Shown piece after piece: positions 43,394-49,995 of a stretch of DNA of 64,000 bases; within the stretch, counting starts at the first letter, position 1; each line of letters begins with the position of its first letter. Position numbers and translations under genes: made by a program. The DNA lies in contig NW_026926296.1 of assembly GCF_032062105.1 (NCBI RefSeq), positions 186,001 through 250,000 of the forward strand. Direction: 5' to 3'. This DNA comes from Saccostrea cucullata (lineage: Eukaryota). Under the pieces are notes generated by a model that saw only the letters and a program-made list of their open reading frames with translations, had not been told where the DNA came from and searched no databases.

Positions 43394-43536
43394 AACCTAA
43401 GCCAGTGAGGTAAAATGATTTGTGCGCTGAAATTTTCTTGGATGCTAAAACGGTGTGTGCATATTTTGTGGATTTAAGTTTGTGTCCTTGAAAATTTTTA
43501 GCTAGCATGAGTTTTTTTGCCTTTCTGACCTGGGTT
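43394..43536 (+). ncRNA. Long RNA hairpin copy 1 (miRNA/hpRNA-like)
   Basis: Hand-paired stem of about 50 bp, with about 10 G.U pairs versus 2 A.C mismatches; 5' arm contains the invariant TGCGCTGAAATTTTCTTGGATGCTAAA (43423-43449). Confidence 0.6.
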
Positions 43537-43905
43537 CATACTCCTCGTTCATATATGGAAGTAAACTTTAGGGGGTTGATTCACCCTCAAAGTAAGTCAC
43601 AATGACTTGCATCCATTCAATAGTTTAGCTGTTATTGCTGTTTGACATCATCTAGTAAATTAATTTAACCTGTCAGTCTTACTGTAAGTGACCTTGTCAC
43701 AATGTTGAGGGCAAAGCATAATTATTATTAAGTCATAATGGACTCCAAAATTGTACATAAGGTGAAGCATATCTTCACTCCTGTGAGATTCATTGCATGG
43801 ACTGATTTCATTCAGCAAGGACCAGTGACTGACCTTAACAGAATTATGTTTAGAAGTATGGGTGGTACATGTATTGTAGTTAGCTCCTGAATCCTTTGAG
43901 CAAAT

Positions 43906-44317
43906 CAGGGATTTTCCACTCACTTTTGGGAATGGGGCCCAGGCCCTTGGAATTGGGAATTTTATGACATTTTATCACTTATTGGGAAATTTTATTGTAT
44001 GATGTTTTTCAAGAACTATTTCTTAAGATGAATAAAAATTGATCATTACTTAGTTATATCAGAATTATGAATCTAGAGATGTTGATCATTGGGTAAAGTT
44101 TTACCCAAGATTCTTCAAAATTTTGAACATCTCATTTATATAAATTTCCAAACTTAAACATGTTTGTAATATGTGAATTATGTTCAGGTTACCTTCTTGA
44201 GTTCTTCTTTTTTTAAAAATTGAACATAGGCAGTTCATTTTTGGGAAAAAGGGAGGGGTTTTGCAATTGGGAATGGGGCCCATATTCGGCCCTACACAGG
44301 GTAGTGGAAAATCCCTG
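43906..44317. mobile_element. hAT-like MITE with 5-bp TSD
   Basis: CAAAT|CAGGGATTTTCCACT...AGTGGAAAATCCCTG|CAAAT. Confidence 0.85.
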
Positions 44318-44699
44318 CAAATGGATGGCTTATAATTCCCTGAGCAACTATACTCACCAAAACAGCAAGTTAAAAAAAACAAGAATGATTATTAGTCCCT
44401 CTAAGTAGGGAGTACAGATAAAAAGGTCATCAGTAACTGTTGAGTGTTGTCCCCATTTGTCCCATTGCTTCGGGGAACTAAGTATAAAATTTTGATGATA
44501 AATATTTAATTTTTTGGGACAAAATACACTTATAACTCTATTCCTGTTTTGGGGAAAGGCAAAGTGTTTACATTATAGTACATATATATGGTATTAAACT
44601 TATCAAACTCTATGTATGCACTTCTGGTGCTGGTACAGATACTATGCAGAATTCATTATAAGAGTATGCCTGGTTTGGGTTAAACCAGTCTCATTTGAG

Positions 44700-47600
44700 C
44701 ATCTCTTATGTTCTCACATTTCAAATTGGTGTCAACAAGTCCAGCTGGTGCTTATATAAACACGTACTTGTATACATCTTGATGGAAAGATGTGTGGTTC
44801 CATCCTTAGGTGGATTCTTCTTCATCAGCTATTTTGGCGCTGTCCACAACAGCCTCCAGAAGTGCACCAACTGGGGTGATCAGGTCCCAGCCTGGAACCA
44901 CTTGGCTCTACATCACTGCTGTTCTATTTTACTGTCTGTCTCACTTCTCTTCATTGTCTTTCCACTTCTCTGCTCTTCTTCTCCACAACCACATGGACAC
45001 TGATTCTGCCTCCCTGCACAGACTCCCTATCAATCTCCTCTCTGCTCCTATTATGCCAATGGCTCTCAGTGCCCTCCACATAGACTGCCCCACAAATCCT
45101 CTACAACCCACTTCCACTGCAAAAAACCAGACCTTCCATCCATTCTGCTGACAATCCTTCAGAAGGTCTTGGTACTTTAGATTTTTCCTTTCGTATGCAT
45201 CCTCCATCCTTCATCATTCCTTCCCATGGCACTGTTAATTCCAAAATAATTGTTTGTCTTGTAGACACTGACCAAATATCTACATCCGGCCTCTTGTTTG
45301 TAGCTATTATTTCAGATGGAAATGCTAATCTTTCCTTGAGTTGTGTCCACATATGCCAATCTGTTGCTTATCCCAGCAGACCACTTCCTTCAACACTAAC
45401 TTATGTCCTTTTTCACCTTCTTTCACAAAGTTGACAAATCTCAGGCCCTCTGTGTTCTTCTTTGGCTTTTTGATACTTTTCTCCAAGGTGTCAGCTATAC
45501 TGGCTAGGACTCTATCATGTCTCCAAGTGTATCTCCTATCTTTTAAAGCCTCTGAGCATGCTGATAATATGTGCTCCAAGTTTGAAGGTTAACCACAGAG
45601 GACACACTTTGGATCATCTGTCACTCCCTATGTTACCAGATTAGTTGGGCTGGGAATCATAAAGGGATTTCAGCTTAAACTGAAGTCTGAATGGTTCCAT
45701 CTTCAAAATATCATTCCATCCCAACTTCACTTGACGTGCATTTTTCCAGTTCAACCAGCTACCTTGTTTCTTCATTCCAACCGCTTTCACCATTCTTGAA
45801 TCTTCCTCCATAATGCAAGCAATTCTCTGCACCAAACTGCGCTTCTCTTCTACTGAAGCTGTCCTCCATCTTGCTGTTGGTGTGACATCAAGCCCTTGCC
45901 TTCCTATTGCCAGTCTTCCAACAATGTCACTGTGTCTCAAGCGGGATTCTGTTATTCTATAGTTTTCTTTACTGACCACTTTCTCCCCGTCCTGATATCT
46001 ACTTTTGCTGTCCAGACCTTCTTGTCTTTGCTATTCTGTAACATTAAGTGTTGACGCACCTTTGTCACCTTGAATTCCTCAGTAATTGACTTTAGAGGTA
46101 ACTGTAGCTTAGTCCCGAAGTTATATAAACCAATGCTGCTGAAACTTCCCAGTACCCCCAGCCATCTCCTTAGGTATCTGCTTGCCGTTGTTTCCATTCC
46201 TTCTACTGTTCTTTTTGGTACATCATACACAAATAGCAGTCATAGCAAGCAAGGCAGTATCCCATGTTGGTAAATCCATGTTTTATATTTACCGGGCAGT
46301 CCACTTTTATCCACAGTTTTCATCCATTCATCCAGCCATCTGCAGGGTTCTTTCACATTTTGCTTGTCTGTTAATGTGTCATTGAAGAATTTCCCTAAAC
46401 ATTTTACTGGCTTCTCTGAGACTCTTGGTATTGCCTCTCCTTCCATCTTGAACCTTTCTTCTTTTACTTTTCCATTCTTTATAACCAAACTTTGAGATTT
46501 GCTTGCTTTTACTTTCAATCTTGCCCAAGTGATAGATGATTCTAGTTCTTGTATTGTCCATTTGGCTTCTGAATAACTGTTTTGGTTGGAACTCTCATAT
46601 CATCCATGAATGCTCTCCCAGATGGTTGGTGTACTCCTGACTTCATCCATGGCCCTCTGCTCTTCTTCTTCACTGACTTGACTATCATGTTCATTACTGC
46701 CGAGAACAGAATTAAGGATATGGTGCATCCTGTGATTTTACCAACTTCTAAGCATTGCCATGCTGTTGTGTAATCCTGTACTGTAAATCTCAGCTGAAGA
46801 GGGTCAAAATAGTCTTTTAAAACTACCCTCATCTTCTCTGGTATATGGTATCTTTCGAGTGTCAGCTCAACAAGTTTATGGGGAACTGTTCCATACGCAT
46901 TTGCTAGATCTAGCCAGATGACTGCCAACTCCCCTTTGGACTCCTTGTTTTCCCATATTTTCTGTGTCATTACATTTGTATGCTCAATGCATCCTAATAC
47001 TCCGGATTACCGTAACTCTTCCCTTCTGCACAGCTTTATCAATATATTGATTTTCAAGCACATAACTAGGCATTCTCCTCGCTAAAATTACAAGGTATAT
47101 CTTTAGAAACAATATTGTCCTAAATTGTTTCAGTACTTCTGATTTCTCTTTGGGAATAAAACAGCCTTCTGCTCTGTACCAGTTATCTGCCAATCGACCT
47201 CTCCTCCAAACTACTCTTATCAGTTTCCAGAAGCATTTTGTATGCCGTTGACAGTTCTTGTAAACTTTATATGAAACCCCGTTTGGTCCTGGTGCTGATG
47301 CTGTTCTCACTTTCTCTACCACTTTTTATAGCTTAGGTGGTGATTCATCAAAGGGTTGATTTGGTTCTTTCGGATGTATCAACTGGTCCCACTCCCCTAA
47401 CTCTTCCTCCCTATGTGGATTACTGTGCATCTCCCTCAAATACTTTTCAACGTCTTCCTTTGAAGATTTCAATGATCCGGACCCTTTATTTCCTAGCAAT
47501 CTTGATGTAAACTGGAATGTGTCTGCGGTGAATCTTGCTCTTGCTCTATCTCATTGCTTCCTTCTATGCCTGCTTCTCTCTGCTCTTCTAGCTATCTTGA

Positions 47601-48545: not shown

Positions 48546-48691
48546 AACCTGGGCCAGTGAGATGACATGTTCATGCGCTGAAATTTTCTTGGATGCTAAA
48601 TCGATGTGTGCATTTACTTGTTTTTATGGAACTGAAGTGTTCTTGAAAATTTTTAGTTAGTATGAATTATGTTGTCTTTCTGACATGGGTT
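48546..48691 (+). ncRNA. Long RNA hairpin copy 2 (miRNA/hpRNA-like)
   Basis: Same fold as copy 1 with compensatory changes; invariant 27-mer at 48574-48600. Confidence 0.6.
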
Positions 48692-49316
48692 CAGATTCTT
48701 TATTCATACCATATCAAAATTGAGGATGTAATATTCCCCAAAGTAGGTCACAATGACTTCTCTTATTCTAAAATTACATGGCTTCTAAAGCTGTTTGCCA
48801 TTTTGGGTTATATCTCATTTCCACTTGGATATTGGATCCTATCTTGAGAATAATCTTGGGGATTGTGTGTACATGTATATCTATTTAATTGTAGGTCACA
48901 AAGACCTATTTTTAAGCCATCAGATACTAGTTATTATAGCAAGGTCATTTTGCTCTTTGATAAGTGATTTATTTTATGACATAAAGTAGGTTACTGAATG
49001 ACCTACATCACTTTGGAATAATTGCTCAGCTAGGATGATTGTCATAAATCATTTGAGGATAGTGTGACACAAACAAATTATAGGTGTCGCAGTGTAACCC
49101 TTCAGAAATACAGGTTTATGAAACATTTTACGTCCAGATAATTGATTTATATTTAATACAGAAGAGACCATTGTACCGTGTTATGAAAGTATCGGGTTAA
49201 AAATGCTATTTTTTTTGCAATAGATGTATTTACCCACTTAAGTATAAGGTGTTTACACCCCCTTAAATCTCACCAGTTAACATACTACTAAATCGGAGGG
49301 AGGGTTGTGAGAGGAT

Positions 49317-49480
49317 GTGGGATACAGTATAGCTTAGTATCAGTGGGATACAGTATAGCTTAGTATCAGTGGGATACAGTATAGCTTAACATAAGTGGAA
49401 TACAGTATAGCTTAGCATCAGTGGGATACAGTATAGCTTAGCATCAGTGGGATACACTACATGTATAGATTAGCATCGGT
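49317..49480. repeat. 26-bp minisatellite (GTGGGATACAGTATAGCTTAGYATCA), about 6 copies
   Basis: Period of 26 (49317/49343). Confidence 0.9.
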
Positions 49481-49851
49481 GTTTTAGAGAGTGGGCTGAG
49501 GCTAATTTCCGCAACAGAGGAAGCTGTACTTTAAATACTTTAATCAATATTTTATGTTATAGCCATTGAAAAAGTCAAGTAACTGCATGTTGAGCATTTG
49601 TTATGTGCATTTGTTGGGCTACATTGAATTTCTAAGAAAAAGTAGGTCATTAGATAAGTATTGCATCCACCTTTAAAACTAAAAGCCCTGCTTGCATGGG
49701 CTTCACTTCTTGGAGGACAGTTAGGTAGATGTTACTTGATATAGGTTTATGCTGTTGCATATTGTTTATTAAACAGAACATGCACTAGTATTCCTCAAAG
49801 ATTTTTAATTGCCATTTCCCACTGAAATTGTGTCAACTATTGAGGGTTGAA

Positions 49852-49995
49852 GCCTAAGTCAGTGAGATGACATGTTTATGCGCTGAAATTTTCTTGGATG
49901 CTAAATCGGTGTGTGCTTATACTTGTTTTTAGGGAACTGAAGTGCTCTTGAAAATTTTTAGTAAGCATGAATTATGTTGACTTTCTGGCCTGGGT
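49852..49995 (+). ncRNA. Long RNA hairpin copy 3 (miRNA/hpRNA-like)
   Basis: Same fold; invariant 27-mer at 49879-49905. Confidence 0.6.

What the first reader, a model, noticed from the sequence alone, without database searches (positions are those of the whole stretch)
43394..49995. Triplicated ~145-nt hairpin with compensatory changes and an invariant 27-nt arm: candidate novel miRNA/hpRNA cluster
Seen: three copies (43394-43536, 48546-48691, 49852-49995) each pair by hand into a stem of about 50 bp with a 25-40-nt loop. The 5'-arm TGCGCTGAAATTTTCTTGGATGCTAAA is identical in all three, whereas the loop and 3' arm vary but mostly keep pairing (GTGTCCTTG/GTGTTCTTG/GTGCTCTTG; AGCTAGCAT/AGTTAGTAT/AGTAAGCAT). 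The lower stem covaries: copy 1 AGGTAAAA:TTTTGCCT versus copy 2 AGATGACA:TGTTGTCT (G-C to A-U, A-U to C-G, A-U to G.U). G.U pairs greatly outnumber A.C mismatches (about 10:2 in copy 1), which a neutrally decaying DNA inverted repeat would not predict, and this fixes the strand as plus, the same as the upstream exon chain. Established: a frozen arm with a drifting star arm and loop is the miRNA-paralogue signature, and long G.U-rich stems occur in Drosophila hpRNAs. I do not recognise the arm as a known miRNA family. Inference: a lineage-specific small-RNA cluster, amplified as a ~1.1-1.3-kb unit in the 3' region of a spliced host lncRNA.
Basis: partly seen in the sequence, partly recalled or inferred. 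Interest (0 to 1): 0.85.

Follow-up and report, generated by a model that had tools for sequence, protein, structure and literature searches.

The report
Oyster tandem RNA hairpin gene family
Three copies of a 145-letter RNA hairpin in this rock-oyster window belong to a family of about 43 copies that evolution has kept folded on one strand, so they are most likely precursors of an undescribed microRNA-type small RNA, although no small RNA or transcript could be shown here.

Summary
Three hairpins lie at the stated coordinates and share an exact 27-mer. They fold far better on the plus strand (-53/-48/-44 kcal/mol) than on the minus strand (-27/-23/-17).

The genome is a Saccostrea rock oyster (1.17 Gb). 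It holds about 43 copies, usually as A-B-B triplets about 1.2-1.5 kb apart, downstream of the same non-coding-looking exon chain on at least 7 contigs.

Over 39 distinct copies:
- 96-98% of stem cells pair.
- 6-8 pairs show compensatory double changes.
- Nine G.U pairs predominate in 26-39 copies.
- Substitutions per column fall from 4.1 in the flanks to 0.5-0.85 in the upper stem and the apical 15 nt.

This is neither a MITE nor a decaying inverted repeat.

Both arms are about equally conserved, so there is no "drifting star arm". Fly-type hpRNA is unlikely, because trochozoans are reported to lack the endo-siRNA machinery.

My best reading, at about 0.5, is a lineage-specific microRNA-type precursor cluster, possibly overlapping a splice donor at the hairpin base.

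Expression is untested. The scan earlier noted a larger hairpin-exon gene family (s1-716618) elsewhere in this genome.

The parts
43394..43536 (+). Hairpin copy 1, type A
   Evidence: MFE -53, z -6.9; covariance-model hit 43389-43541 at 150.7 bits; 13 G.U pairs.
48546..48691 (+). Hairpin copy 2, type B
   Evidence: MFE -48.1, z -6.2; covariance-model hit 48541-48696 at 168.1 bits.
49852..49995 (+). Hairpin copy 3, type B
   Evidence: MFE -44.3, z -4.4; covariance-model hit 49846-50001 at 161.1 bits.
43423..43464 (+). Most constrained stretch of copy 1: the 5' half of the upper stem plus the roughly 15-nt apical segment ending in UGUGUGC. The equivalent stretches are 48574-48615 and 49879-49920.
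   Evidence: 0.85 changes per column in the upper 5' stem and 0.53 in the apical segment, against 4.1 in the flanks. Eleven apical positions are invariant in 39 copies.
43482..43502 (+). 3' half of the upper stem in copy 1, as conserved as the 5' half. The equivalent stretches are 48637-48657 and 49942-49962.
   Evidence: 0.57 changes per column; D3 repeat family; pairs 42-61 with 109-129 are 98.6% paired.
43405..43409 (+). GTGAG at the hairpin base, a 5'-splice-donor-like core that lies inside the basal stem. The same motif lies at the base of copies 2 and 3.
   Evidence: Columns 17-21 of alignment A1 are nearly invariant. T18 sits opposite T155 as a conserved U.U mismatch in 32 of 38 copies. 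Use as a donor is inferred, not shown.
43362..43381 (+). Box 1, a conserved palindrome (TTTCCAC-N-GTGGAAA) about 20-60 nt upstream of the hairpin base. Also at 48477-48496, and at 52480-52499 in a unit without a hairpin.
   Evidence: 5 matches against 0.05 expected; present in 26 of 37 units; identity 0.72-0.82 across units.
43593..43606 (+). Box 2, a conserved near-palindrome (AGGTCA-N3-TGACCT type) about 45-55 nt downstream of the hairpin in copies 1 and 2. Also at 48744-48757, 48892-48905, 50132-50145 (about 135 nt after copy 3), 51518-51531 and 52761-52774.
   Evidence: 8 matches against 0.48 expected; present in 32 of 37 units. The role is unknown: a splice-site reading and a protein-binding reading are both open.
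43321..43331 (+). Pyrimidine-rich tract ending in CAG, a 3'-splice-acceptor-like site about 60 nt upstream of hairpin 1. A similar site precedes copy 3 near 49766-49776.
   Evidence: The block 43244-43368 is 0.66-0.78 identical across 8 type-A loci, against about 0.45-0.6 further out. Use as an acceptor is inferred.
44741..48340 (-). Window-specific insertion carrying a reverse-transcriptase fragment (ORF 46542-46970). It explains the 5.1-kb gap between copies 1 and 2.
   Evidence: Pfam RVT_1, E 4e-7. Collinear paralogues jump from window ~44741 to ~48340 (L004, L032, L010, L034).
23640..43034 (+). Upstream exon-pair chain interrupted by satellites. It is shared with paralogous loci and is presumed to be the host transcript.
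Evidence: C566 and C17242 upstream regions match 31.5-33 kb and 40.7-43.0 kb at 67-83%. Reading frames are broken (read by eye).

Best explanation
The three hairpins belong to a family of about 43 structured RNA hairpins of about 145 nt in a Saccostrea rock oyster. They are arranged as A-B-B arrays inside a multi-copy, spliced-looking, non-coding gene family.

I think they are most likely primary-microRNA-type precursors, transcribed on the plus strand as part of the host RNA and cropped by Drosha and Dicer-1. The most constrained roughly 20-22-bp upper-stem duplex would give the mature and star products.

The hairpin base carries a conserved GTGAG. The hairpin may therefore straddle an exon-intron junction, so that splicing and cropping compete.

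Shown here: the fold, its strand specificity, its selective maintenance, the family size and the locus architecture. Inferred: transcription, processing into small RNAs, and any use of the splice-like sites.
For: 1. Fold. All 39 distinct copies fold better on the plus strand than on the minus strand (mean -45.3 against -19.7 kcal/mol). The three window copies have z -4.4 to -6.9.

2. Maintenance of pairing. 98.0% of cells pair over 36 pairs and 96.2% over 39 pairs. Six to eight pairs carry double changes (reached by 3-4 of 500 shuffles). The covariation score is 0.137-0.139 against 0.110-0.111 in shuffles (0 of 500). Slid controls pair in only 38-56% of cells. Stepwise paths are visible, for example A-U > G.U > G-C at 47:123 and C-G > U.G > U-A at 39:136.

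3. Strand-specific tolerance. Parsimony events are WC>GU 18 and GU>WC 20, against WC>AC 5. P is 0.005 against a 1:1 expectation and 0.039 against the background transition asymmetry.

4. Saddle-shaped constraint. Changes per column are: flanks 4.1-4.2, variable loop 2.6, lower stem 1.4-1.6, upper stem 0.57-0.85. In collinear paralogues, identity is 0.81-0.98 in the hairpin and mostly about 0.4-0.7 in the aligned flanks.

5. Geometry compatible with a Microprocessor substrate. There are 33 nt from the conserved internal loop (columns 22-23) to the apical junction. A UG lies at columns 18-19, about 13-14 nt before the start of the conserved duplex. This comes from counting on A1 and is inference.

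6. Context. Arrays are tandem, in one orientation, downstream of the same exon chain at 7 or more loci.

7. Pathway. The miRNA pathway is conserved in molluscs, while endo-siRNA proteins are reported lost (PMC11114477).

8. RNA runs. Two RNA runs hold 5-7% of the sampled words of 48400-50100. This is weak, because nothing was laid.
Against: - No small-RNA or transcript evidence.
- The stem is 42-50 bp, longer than the canonical ~35 bp.
- The first 15 apical nucleotides are the most invariant part although they are unpaired in the consensus. That is unusual for a miRNA loop and points to sequence-specific recognition.
- The positions that would form the seed of an upper-stem 5p or 3p product (columns 39, 42, 113) vary between subfamilies.
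- I saw no CNNC motif at the expected distance downstream.
- There is no Rfam match. Neither arm's 13-15-mers occur in the supplementary miRNA lists of two Crassostrea studies.
- Conservation was measured only among paralogues of one genome.
- The whole 53-kb block is missing at the syntenic site of S. echinata.
Confidence: 0.5

Rival explanations
1. A structured RNA module that acts as a hairpin and is not cut into small RNAs. It could hide the GTGAG donor in its basal stem to control splicing of the repeated units. Or it could be a repeated protein-binding module of a long non-coding RNA, recognised through the invariant apical UGUGUGC segment and the conserved U.U internal loops.
For: - GTGAG is nearly invariant at the stem base, with a conserved U.U mismatch at the T of the GT.
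- Acceptor-like and palindromic boxes flank each hairpin at fixed distances.
- The apical 15 nt are the least variable part at 0.53 changes per column. A plain miRNA loop would not need that.
- The 2x2 U.U loop at columns 54-55 / 115-116 is kept in 37-38 of 39 copies.
Against: - Simple occlusion of a splice site does not need 40 or more conserved base pairs, nor near-invariant sequence on both arms.
- A fourth Box1-Box2 unit (52480-52775) has no hairpin, so the hairpin is not an obligatory part of the unit.
- No splicing data are available.
Confidence: 0.25
2. A mobile-element hairpin. The fold would be a single-stranded-DNA or terminal structure of a transposon (Helentron-, Crypton- or MITE-like), and the arrays would be tandem insertions.
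For: - Earlier notes of this scan report ~150-nt terminal hairpins in several transposon families of this genome (s1-707189, s1-721955; not tested here).
- G.T pairs are also tolerated in single-stranded DNA, so the strand bias alone does not prove RNA.
- C17400 carries five nearly identical units with a 981-bp period.
- Palindromic boxes flank the hairpin.
Against: - There are only about 43 copies in 1.17 Gb.
- Every copy examined sits in the same collinear context (exon chain, A, B, B, then a downstream segment), and homology extends kilobases beyond the hairpin.
- No homology break was seen at the hairpin edges, so nothing marks an element end there; TSDs and TIRs were not searched for directly.
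- No transposase lies inside the units. The only reverse-transcriptase fragment is a later insertion on the opposite strand.
Confidence: 0.08
3. A neutrally evolving inverted repeat or satellite unit. It would look conserved only because the copies are young or are homogenised by gene conversion.
For: - All comparisons are between paralogues of one genome.
- B copies of one locus often group together, which suggests local homogenisation.
- The plus strand is G+T-rich even in the flanks (0.548).
Against: - Within one 145-nt element the loop changes 3-5 times faster than the stems, and the flanks faster still. A conversion tract would not spare the loop.
- Compensatory changes and the WC>GU excess over WC>AC exceed the controls.
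- Type-A copies at 8 loci are 90-93% identical where the collinear flanks are 70-78%.
Confidence: 0.07
4. A Drosophila-type hairpin RNA (hpRNA) giving endogenous siRNAs through a Dicer-2/AGO2-like route.
For: A long G.U-rich stem of about 50 bp could yield two phased duplexes.
Against: - Proteins of the endo-siRNA pathway are reported lost in all Trochozoa, molluscs included (PMC11114477).
- The arms have no homologue elsewhere in the genome that could be a target or a source gene.
- The stem is far shorter than in fly hpRNAs.
Confidence: 0.05

Closest known systems
Large lineage-specific tandem miRNA clusters in repeated non-coding host units (primate C19MC, zebrafish mir-430, mouse Sfmbt2 cluster). 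From my own knowledge.
   Same: Repeated ~1-2-kb units each carry one hairpin in one orientation. The units lie within a spliced non-coding host made of duplicated exons. The hairpins are paralogous, with conserved stems and variable loops. The cluster is restricted to one lineage.
   Different: Here the array is short (usually three hairpins), but the whole gene is multiplied to about 10-15 loci, some of them probably haplotigs. The hairpin is longer, with a 42-50-bp stem. The apical segment is invariant. No small RNAs have been shown.
Splice-site-overlapping pri-miRNAs and 3'-tailed mirtrons. From my own knowledge.
   Same: A conserved GTGAG lies in the basal stem, an acceptor-like site lies upstream, and an AG-containing box lies about 45 nt after the hairpin. 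The hairpin could begin at, or span, a 5' splice site.
   Different: Between 2 and 8 stem pairs lie outside the GT. The most conserved part is the upper stem, not the part next to the splice site from which a mirtron's 5p would come. Splice-site use is unproven.
Hairpin-exon non-coding gene family noted earlier in this genome (s1-716618).
   Same: It is in the same genome. It also has tandem runs of a strongly conserved hairpin inside multi-copy non-coding genes, and it was read as a microRNA-type precursor family without small-RNA proof.
   Different: That family is reported with more than 570 copies in about 30 genes; this one has about 43 copies. I could not compare the sequences, so I do not know whether the two are related.
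Drosophila hpRNA loci.
   Same: A long stem with many G.U pairs, and strand-specific folding.
   Different: The pathway is reported absent in molluscs. The arms are not derived from a detectable target gene. The stem is much shorter.
MITE / foldback transposons of bivalves.
   Same: An inverted repeat of about 145 nt, with tandem-repeat-rich surroundings.
   Different: Copy number is low, the genomic context is constant, no termini are defined, the G.U/A.C ratio is asymmetric, and there are compensatory changes.

Membership tests
Canonical animal miRNA precursor | Imperfect hairpin with a duplex of about 22 bp (16 or more pairs) on the transcribed strand | tested here: met
   The upper stem, columns 42-61 with 109-129, has 18 pairs that are 98.6% paired in 39 copies. 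MFE is -44 to -53 kcal/mol.
Canonical animal miRNA precursor | Reads from both arms with homogeneous 5' ends and 2-nt 3' overhangs | not testable with these tools
Canonical animal miRNA precursor | Stem of about 35 bp between the basal and apical junctions (11 + 22 rule) | tested here: inconclusive
   The full stem has 42-50 positions. It is 33 nt if the conserved internal loop at columns 22-23 acts as the basal junction.
Canonical animal miRNA precursor | Match to a described miRNA family | tested here: not met
   Rfam 15 found nothing at the gathering score and nothing relevant at E up to 10. There was no hit in full text or in the supplements of two Crassostrea miRNA papers.
Canonical animal miRNA precursor | Conservation of the hairpin in related species | not testable with these tools
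   No tool searches other oyster genomes by DNA. Metagenome scans found nothing. The syntenic site of S. echinata lacks the whole block.
MITE / foldback transposon | Many dispersed copies in unrelated contexts with defined ends and target-site duplications | tested here: not met
   About 43 copies. Every copy examined lies in collinear paralogous loci, with homology running beyond the hairpin.
MITE / foldback transposon | Arms decay symmetrically, with G.U and A.C mismatches about equal | tested here: not met
   WC>GU 18 against WC>AC 5. G.U/U.G is the commonest type at nine pairs and A.C at none, although 22:151 is A.C in 12 of 39 copies.
Drosophila-type hpRNA | Endo-siRNA machinery (Dicer-2, siRNA Argonaute) present in the organism | not tested
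   Literature only: reported lost in all Trochozoa (PMC11114477). I did not search this genome for the proteins.
Drosophila-type hpRNA | Arms homologous to a target gene elsewhere in the genome | tested here: not met
   Genome searches with the hairpins, and with the 27-mer at up to 3 mismatches on both strands, returned only the hairpin copies themselves.
3'-tailed mirtron / splice-site-overlapping pri-miRNA | 5' splice site at or within the base of the hairpin | tested here: inconclusive
   GTGAG is present at columns 17-21 in about 34 of 39 copies, but these columns are also stem pairs. No junction reads are available.
C19MC-like tandem cluster in a repeated non-coding host | Tandem units, one hairpin each, in one orientation, inside a host of duplicated non-coding exons | tested here: met
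   A-B-B order occurs on C8433, C566, C2365, C17242, C13148, C21028 and C20157. The upstream exon chain is shared. Its frames are broken.

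The most novel reading that the evidence does not exclude
Rock oysters may carry a second, independent multi-copy family of non-coding genes whose repeated units each place a long conserved hairpin across a splice donor. 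That would make a mollusc counterpart of C19MC-type clusters in which splicing and Microprocessor cropping compete. Its apical sequence motif (UGUGUGC) may be read by a dedicated factor.

Together with the >570-copy family noted earlier (s1-716618), this would mean that a sizeable, undescribed share of the oyster small-RNA repertoire comes from amplified hairpin genes.
Probability: 0.3. Interest if true: 0.7.

Novelty: new member of a known kind. Interest (0 to 1): 0.55.

Why it matters
If the hairpins give small RNAs, this is a young, amplified miRNA-type family in a mollusc. Lineage-specific miRNA clusters are poorly charted in molluscs, and the only remaining hairpin-processing route there is reported to be the miRNA pathway.

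The A-B-B arrays repeated at many loci offer a natural series for studying three questions: how new miRNA genes are born and multiplied, whether splice-site overlap regulates their output, and what reads the invariant apical motif.

If no small RNAs are found, the family is still a strongly selected RNA structure of unknown function in a multi-copy non-coding gene.

Tried and rejected
**Reads.** The look-up of sequencing runs on 48400-50100 gave only weak holders, with shares of 0.05-0.07. One local covariance-model scan and two motif scans used the whole window only as target.

**Other species and RNA contigs.**
- Two metagenome pattern scans found nothing.
- Exact look-up of ten ORFs overlapping the units found none in the collection.
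- A search with the spurious antisense ORF through a hairpin (L033:1489-1662) found no candidate.

**Whole-genome search with the covariance model R1.** It failed three times with a machine error.

I re-ran it by coordinates only.

**Rejected readings.**
- Known ribozyme, snoRNA or Y RNA: Rfam was negative.
- Pol III unit: T4-T7 runs lie inside both arms (read by eye).
- A fourth hairpin between Box 1 at 52480 and Box 2 at 52761: z -0.6.
- The weak model hit at 62793-62897 is an unrelated perfect palindrome.

The exon chain was only read piece by piece.

Full report
**1. The observation**

The three stretches are as described. The 27-mer is exact at 43423, 48574 and 49879, with none expected by chance.

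| Copy | Plus-strand MFE (kcal/mol) | z | Minus-strand MFE |
|---|---|---|---|
| 1 | -53.0 | -6.9 | -26.9 |
| 2 | -48.1 | -6.2 | -22.9 |
| 3 | -44.3 | -4.4 | -16.8 |

Each copy has 40-43 Watson-Crick pairs, 12-13 G.U pairs, and one or two A.C mismatches.

**2. Organism and locus**

The ORF at 402-2174 (minus) is a B-box/NHL protein. It is 90% identical to an uncharacterised protein of Saccostrea echinata. The window therefore comes from a rock oyster. Its assembly has 1.17 Gb in 23,869 contigs.

I fetched the S. echinata locus and compared it with the window:
- The ubiquitin-conjugating-enzyme gene matches window 56.3-60.4 kb.
- The NHL gene matches 0.4-2.3 kb.
- In S. echinata these two genes lie about 3.3 kb apart. 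In the window they are 54 kb apart.

So the whole block from 3.25 to 56.3 kb is missing at that syntenic site. That block holds the satellites, the exon chain and the hairpins. It is either a lineage-specific insertion or segmental copy, or a deletion in S. echinata.

**3. Family size and arrangement**

Genome searches with copies 1 and 2 each found 40 scored matches out of 43 candidates. The 27-mer occurs 39 times within three mismatches, 18 of them exact, and the reversed control gives 0. This is a low-copy family.

There are two subtypes: A (like copy 1) and B (like copies 2 and 3).
- The order A-B-B recurs on C8433 (this window), C566, C2365, C17242, C13148, C21028 and C20157.
- C12760 has four copies.
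- C17400 has five nearly identical A units with a 981-bp period.
- C17381 has three B units.

Some contigs are probably haplotigs of each other. Copies are identical or near-identical between C17242 and C13148, and between C17381 and C19598.

In the tree, the A copies of eight loci form one clade and the B copies another. B copies of one locus are often sisters. The A/B split therefore predates the multiplication of the locus. The B copies were either re-duplicated or homogenised later.

The loci are collinear over kilobases:
- The regions upstream of hairpin A on C566 and C17242 match the window's exon chain (31.5-33 kb and 40.7-43.0 kb) at 67-83%.
- Downstream homology continues to about 52.2 kb.
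- In the paralogues, A and the first B lie about 1.2 kb apart. Window 43895-44346, 44741-48340 and 50183-51306 are window-specific insertions. The second carries a reverse-transcriptase fragment on the minus strand.

What is repeated is therefore a whole gene-sized locus, not a 1-kb mobile unit.

**4. Evidence for selection on an RNA-type fold**

I aligned 39 distinct copies as alignment A1.

*Pairing and covariation.* RNAalifold predicts 36 pairs.

| Measure | 36 pairs | 39 pairs, adding three pairs from the single-sequence folds |
|---|---|---|
| Cells paired | 98.0% | 96.2% |
| Pairs with double changes | 6 (reached by 3 of 500 shuffles) | 8 (reached by 4 of 500) |
| Covariation score (0 of 500 shuffles reach it) | 0.137 against 0.111 | 0.139 against 0.110 |
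| Slid controls, cells paired | 38-56% | 40-54% |

Stepwise compensation is visible. Pair 47:123 has A-U in 31 copies, G.U in 5 and G-C in 2. Pair 39:136 has C-G in 33, U.G in 3 and U-A in 3. However, 22:151 is A.C in 12 copies, so A.C is not wholly excluded.

*Strand.* All 39 copies fold better on the plus strand, with a mean of -45.3 against -19.7 kcal/mol.

*Pair-state events.* I counted pair-state changes by parsimony on a FastTree tree:

| Event | Count |
|---|---|
| WC>GU | 18 |
| GU>WC | 20 |
| WC>AC | 5 |
| AC>WC | 2 |
| Pair > other mismatch | 19 |

Unpaired columns show a milder transition asymmetry of 52:37. Against that background, 18 of 23 has P = 0.039. Against 1:1 it has P = 0.005. 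The hairpin is 64% G+T and its flanks are 55%.

*Regional constraint:*

| Region | Changes per column |
|---|---|
| Flanks | 4.1-4.2 |
| Variable part of the loop | 2.6 |
| Lower stem | 1.4-1.6 |
| Upper stem, 5' side | 0.85 |
| Upper stem, 3' side | 0.57 |
| First 15 apical nucleotides | 0.53 |

Among eight collinear type-A loci, identity to the window is 0.81-0.98 across the hairpin. It is 0.66-0.78 in a ~125-nt upstream block, 0.73-0.85 in a ~50-nt downstream block, and mostly about 0.4-0.7 elsewhere.

Both arms are about equally constrained. The 'frozen arm / drifting star arm' contrast does not survive the larger sample. Gene conversion alone would not leave the loop free while freezing both arms.

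**5. What surrounds each hairpin**

- *Box 1.* A palindrome of the form TTTCCAC-N-GTGGAAA lies about 20-60 nt upstream of the hairpin base, in 26 of 37 units.
- *Box 2.* A near-palindrome of the AGGTCA-N3-TGACCT type lies about 45-55 nt after the hairpin in copies 1 and 2, in 32 of 37 units. It recurs six times on the plus strand between 43.6 and 52.8 kb, with 8 window matches against 0.48 expected.
- *Acceptor-like site.* A pyrimidine tract ending in CAG lies about 60 nt before hairpins 1 and 3.
- *Donor-like site.* GTGAG sits inside the basal stem of nearly all copies. Its T is kept as a U.U mismatch.

Box 2 reads as a donor (G|GTARGT) in 23 of 32 units, and it contains an AG in 31 of 32 (counted). 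So exon-intron assignment stays open. The hairpin could be exonic, could begin an intron, or could straddle a junction.

A fourth Box 1-Box 2 interval (52480-52775) has no significant fold.

The upstream 'exons' have broken frames in the stretch I read.

**6. What it most likely is**

Transposon and neutral-repeat readings fit poorly, for four reasons: low copy number, constant context, asymmetric mismatches and compensatory changes.

A fly-type hpRNA is unlikely for two reasons. The endo-siRNA proteins are reported lost in Trochozoa (PMC11114477). And no arm-only homologue exists in the genome.

The miRNA pathway is the remaining known route for such a hairpin. The geometry can be read as canonical: 33 nt from the conserved internal loop to the apical junction, and a UG 13-14 nt before the conserved duplex. 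That reading is my inference.

Several features count against a plain miRNA:
- the long stem,
- the invariant apical motif,
- variable would-be seed positions,
- no CNNC motif at the expected distance,
- no database or literature match,
- no expression data.

| Reading | Confidence |
|---|---|
| miRNA-type precursor | about 0.5 |
| Non-processed structural, splice-regulating or protein-binding RNA module | 0.25 |
| Transposon hairpin | 0.08 |
| Neutral repeat | 0.07 |
| hpRNA | 0.05 |

**7. Relation to earlier notes of this scan**

s1-716618 describes a larger family of hairpin-bearing exons in about 30 non-coding genes of the same genome (more than 570 copies), also read as microRNA-type and without small-RNA proof. 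s1-732131 describes a 'micro-exon + splice-donor hairpin' cassette array on another piece.

I could not compare the sequences, so I do not know whether either is the same family. Both are leads, not support. The second made me examine the GTGAG at the stem base.

**8. Verdict**

This is a real, selected, plus-strand hairpin family in a multi-copy non-coding locus. It is probably a lineage-specific miRNA-type cluster, but that is unproven. Its architecture has known parallels, so I rate it a new member of a known kind, with interest 0.55.

Noticed in passing
window 3250-56300: The whole ~53-kb block between the NHL gene (411-2260) and the ubiquitin-conjugating-enzyme gene (56303-60414) is absent from the syntenic site in Saccostrea echinata, where the two genes lie ~3.3 kb apart. 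The same tandem-repeat family lies near both edges (3260-4260 and 56020-56250) and also at 11.3-13.7 kb and 62.6-63.1 kb.
   Followed up: partly
window 62793-62897 (-): A near-perfect ~45-nt-arm palindrome unrelated to the hairpin family. It was picked up as a weak covariance-model hit (20 bits) and is probably a foldback element.
   Followed up: partly
window 49291-49485: A 26-nt tandem repeat (about 7 units) lies in the spacer between hairpin copies 2 and 3. Part of it (49395-49480) is 93% identical in the C12140 paralogue.
   Followed up: no
window 23248-26630, 33189-34525, 37425-38190, 38516-39561, 41812-41946: Several distinct satellites, with periods of 21, 31, 147, 108, 166 and 34 nt, are interleaved with the upstream exon chain. 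The 34-nt repeat contains the same TAGGTCAC core as Box 2.
   Followed up: no
window 43593, 48744, 48892, 50132, 51518, 52761 (+): Inverted repeats of the AGGTCA-N3-TGACCT type recur in one orientation through the hairpin region; three of the six are perfect. To my knowledge this is the form of a nuclear-receptor (oestrogen-receptor-type) response element, and as RNA it would form a 6-7-bp mini-hairpin. Its role is unknown.
   Followed up: partly
window 52480-52775: A fourth unit has Box 1 and Box 2 at the usual spacing but no significant hairpin between them. The boxes and the hairpin are therefore separable modules.
   Followed up: yes
G000:C17400:1619-5702: Five nearly identical type-A hairpin units in tandem with a 981-bp period on a short contig. 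This is a recent local amplification, unlike the A-B-B arrangement elsewhere.
   Followed up: partly
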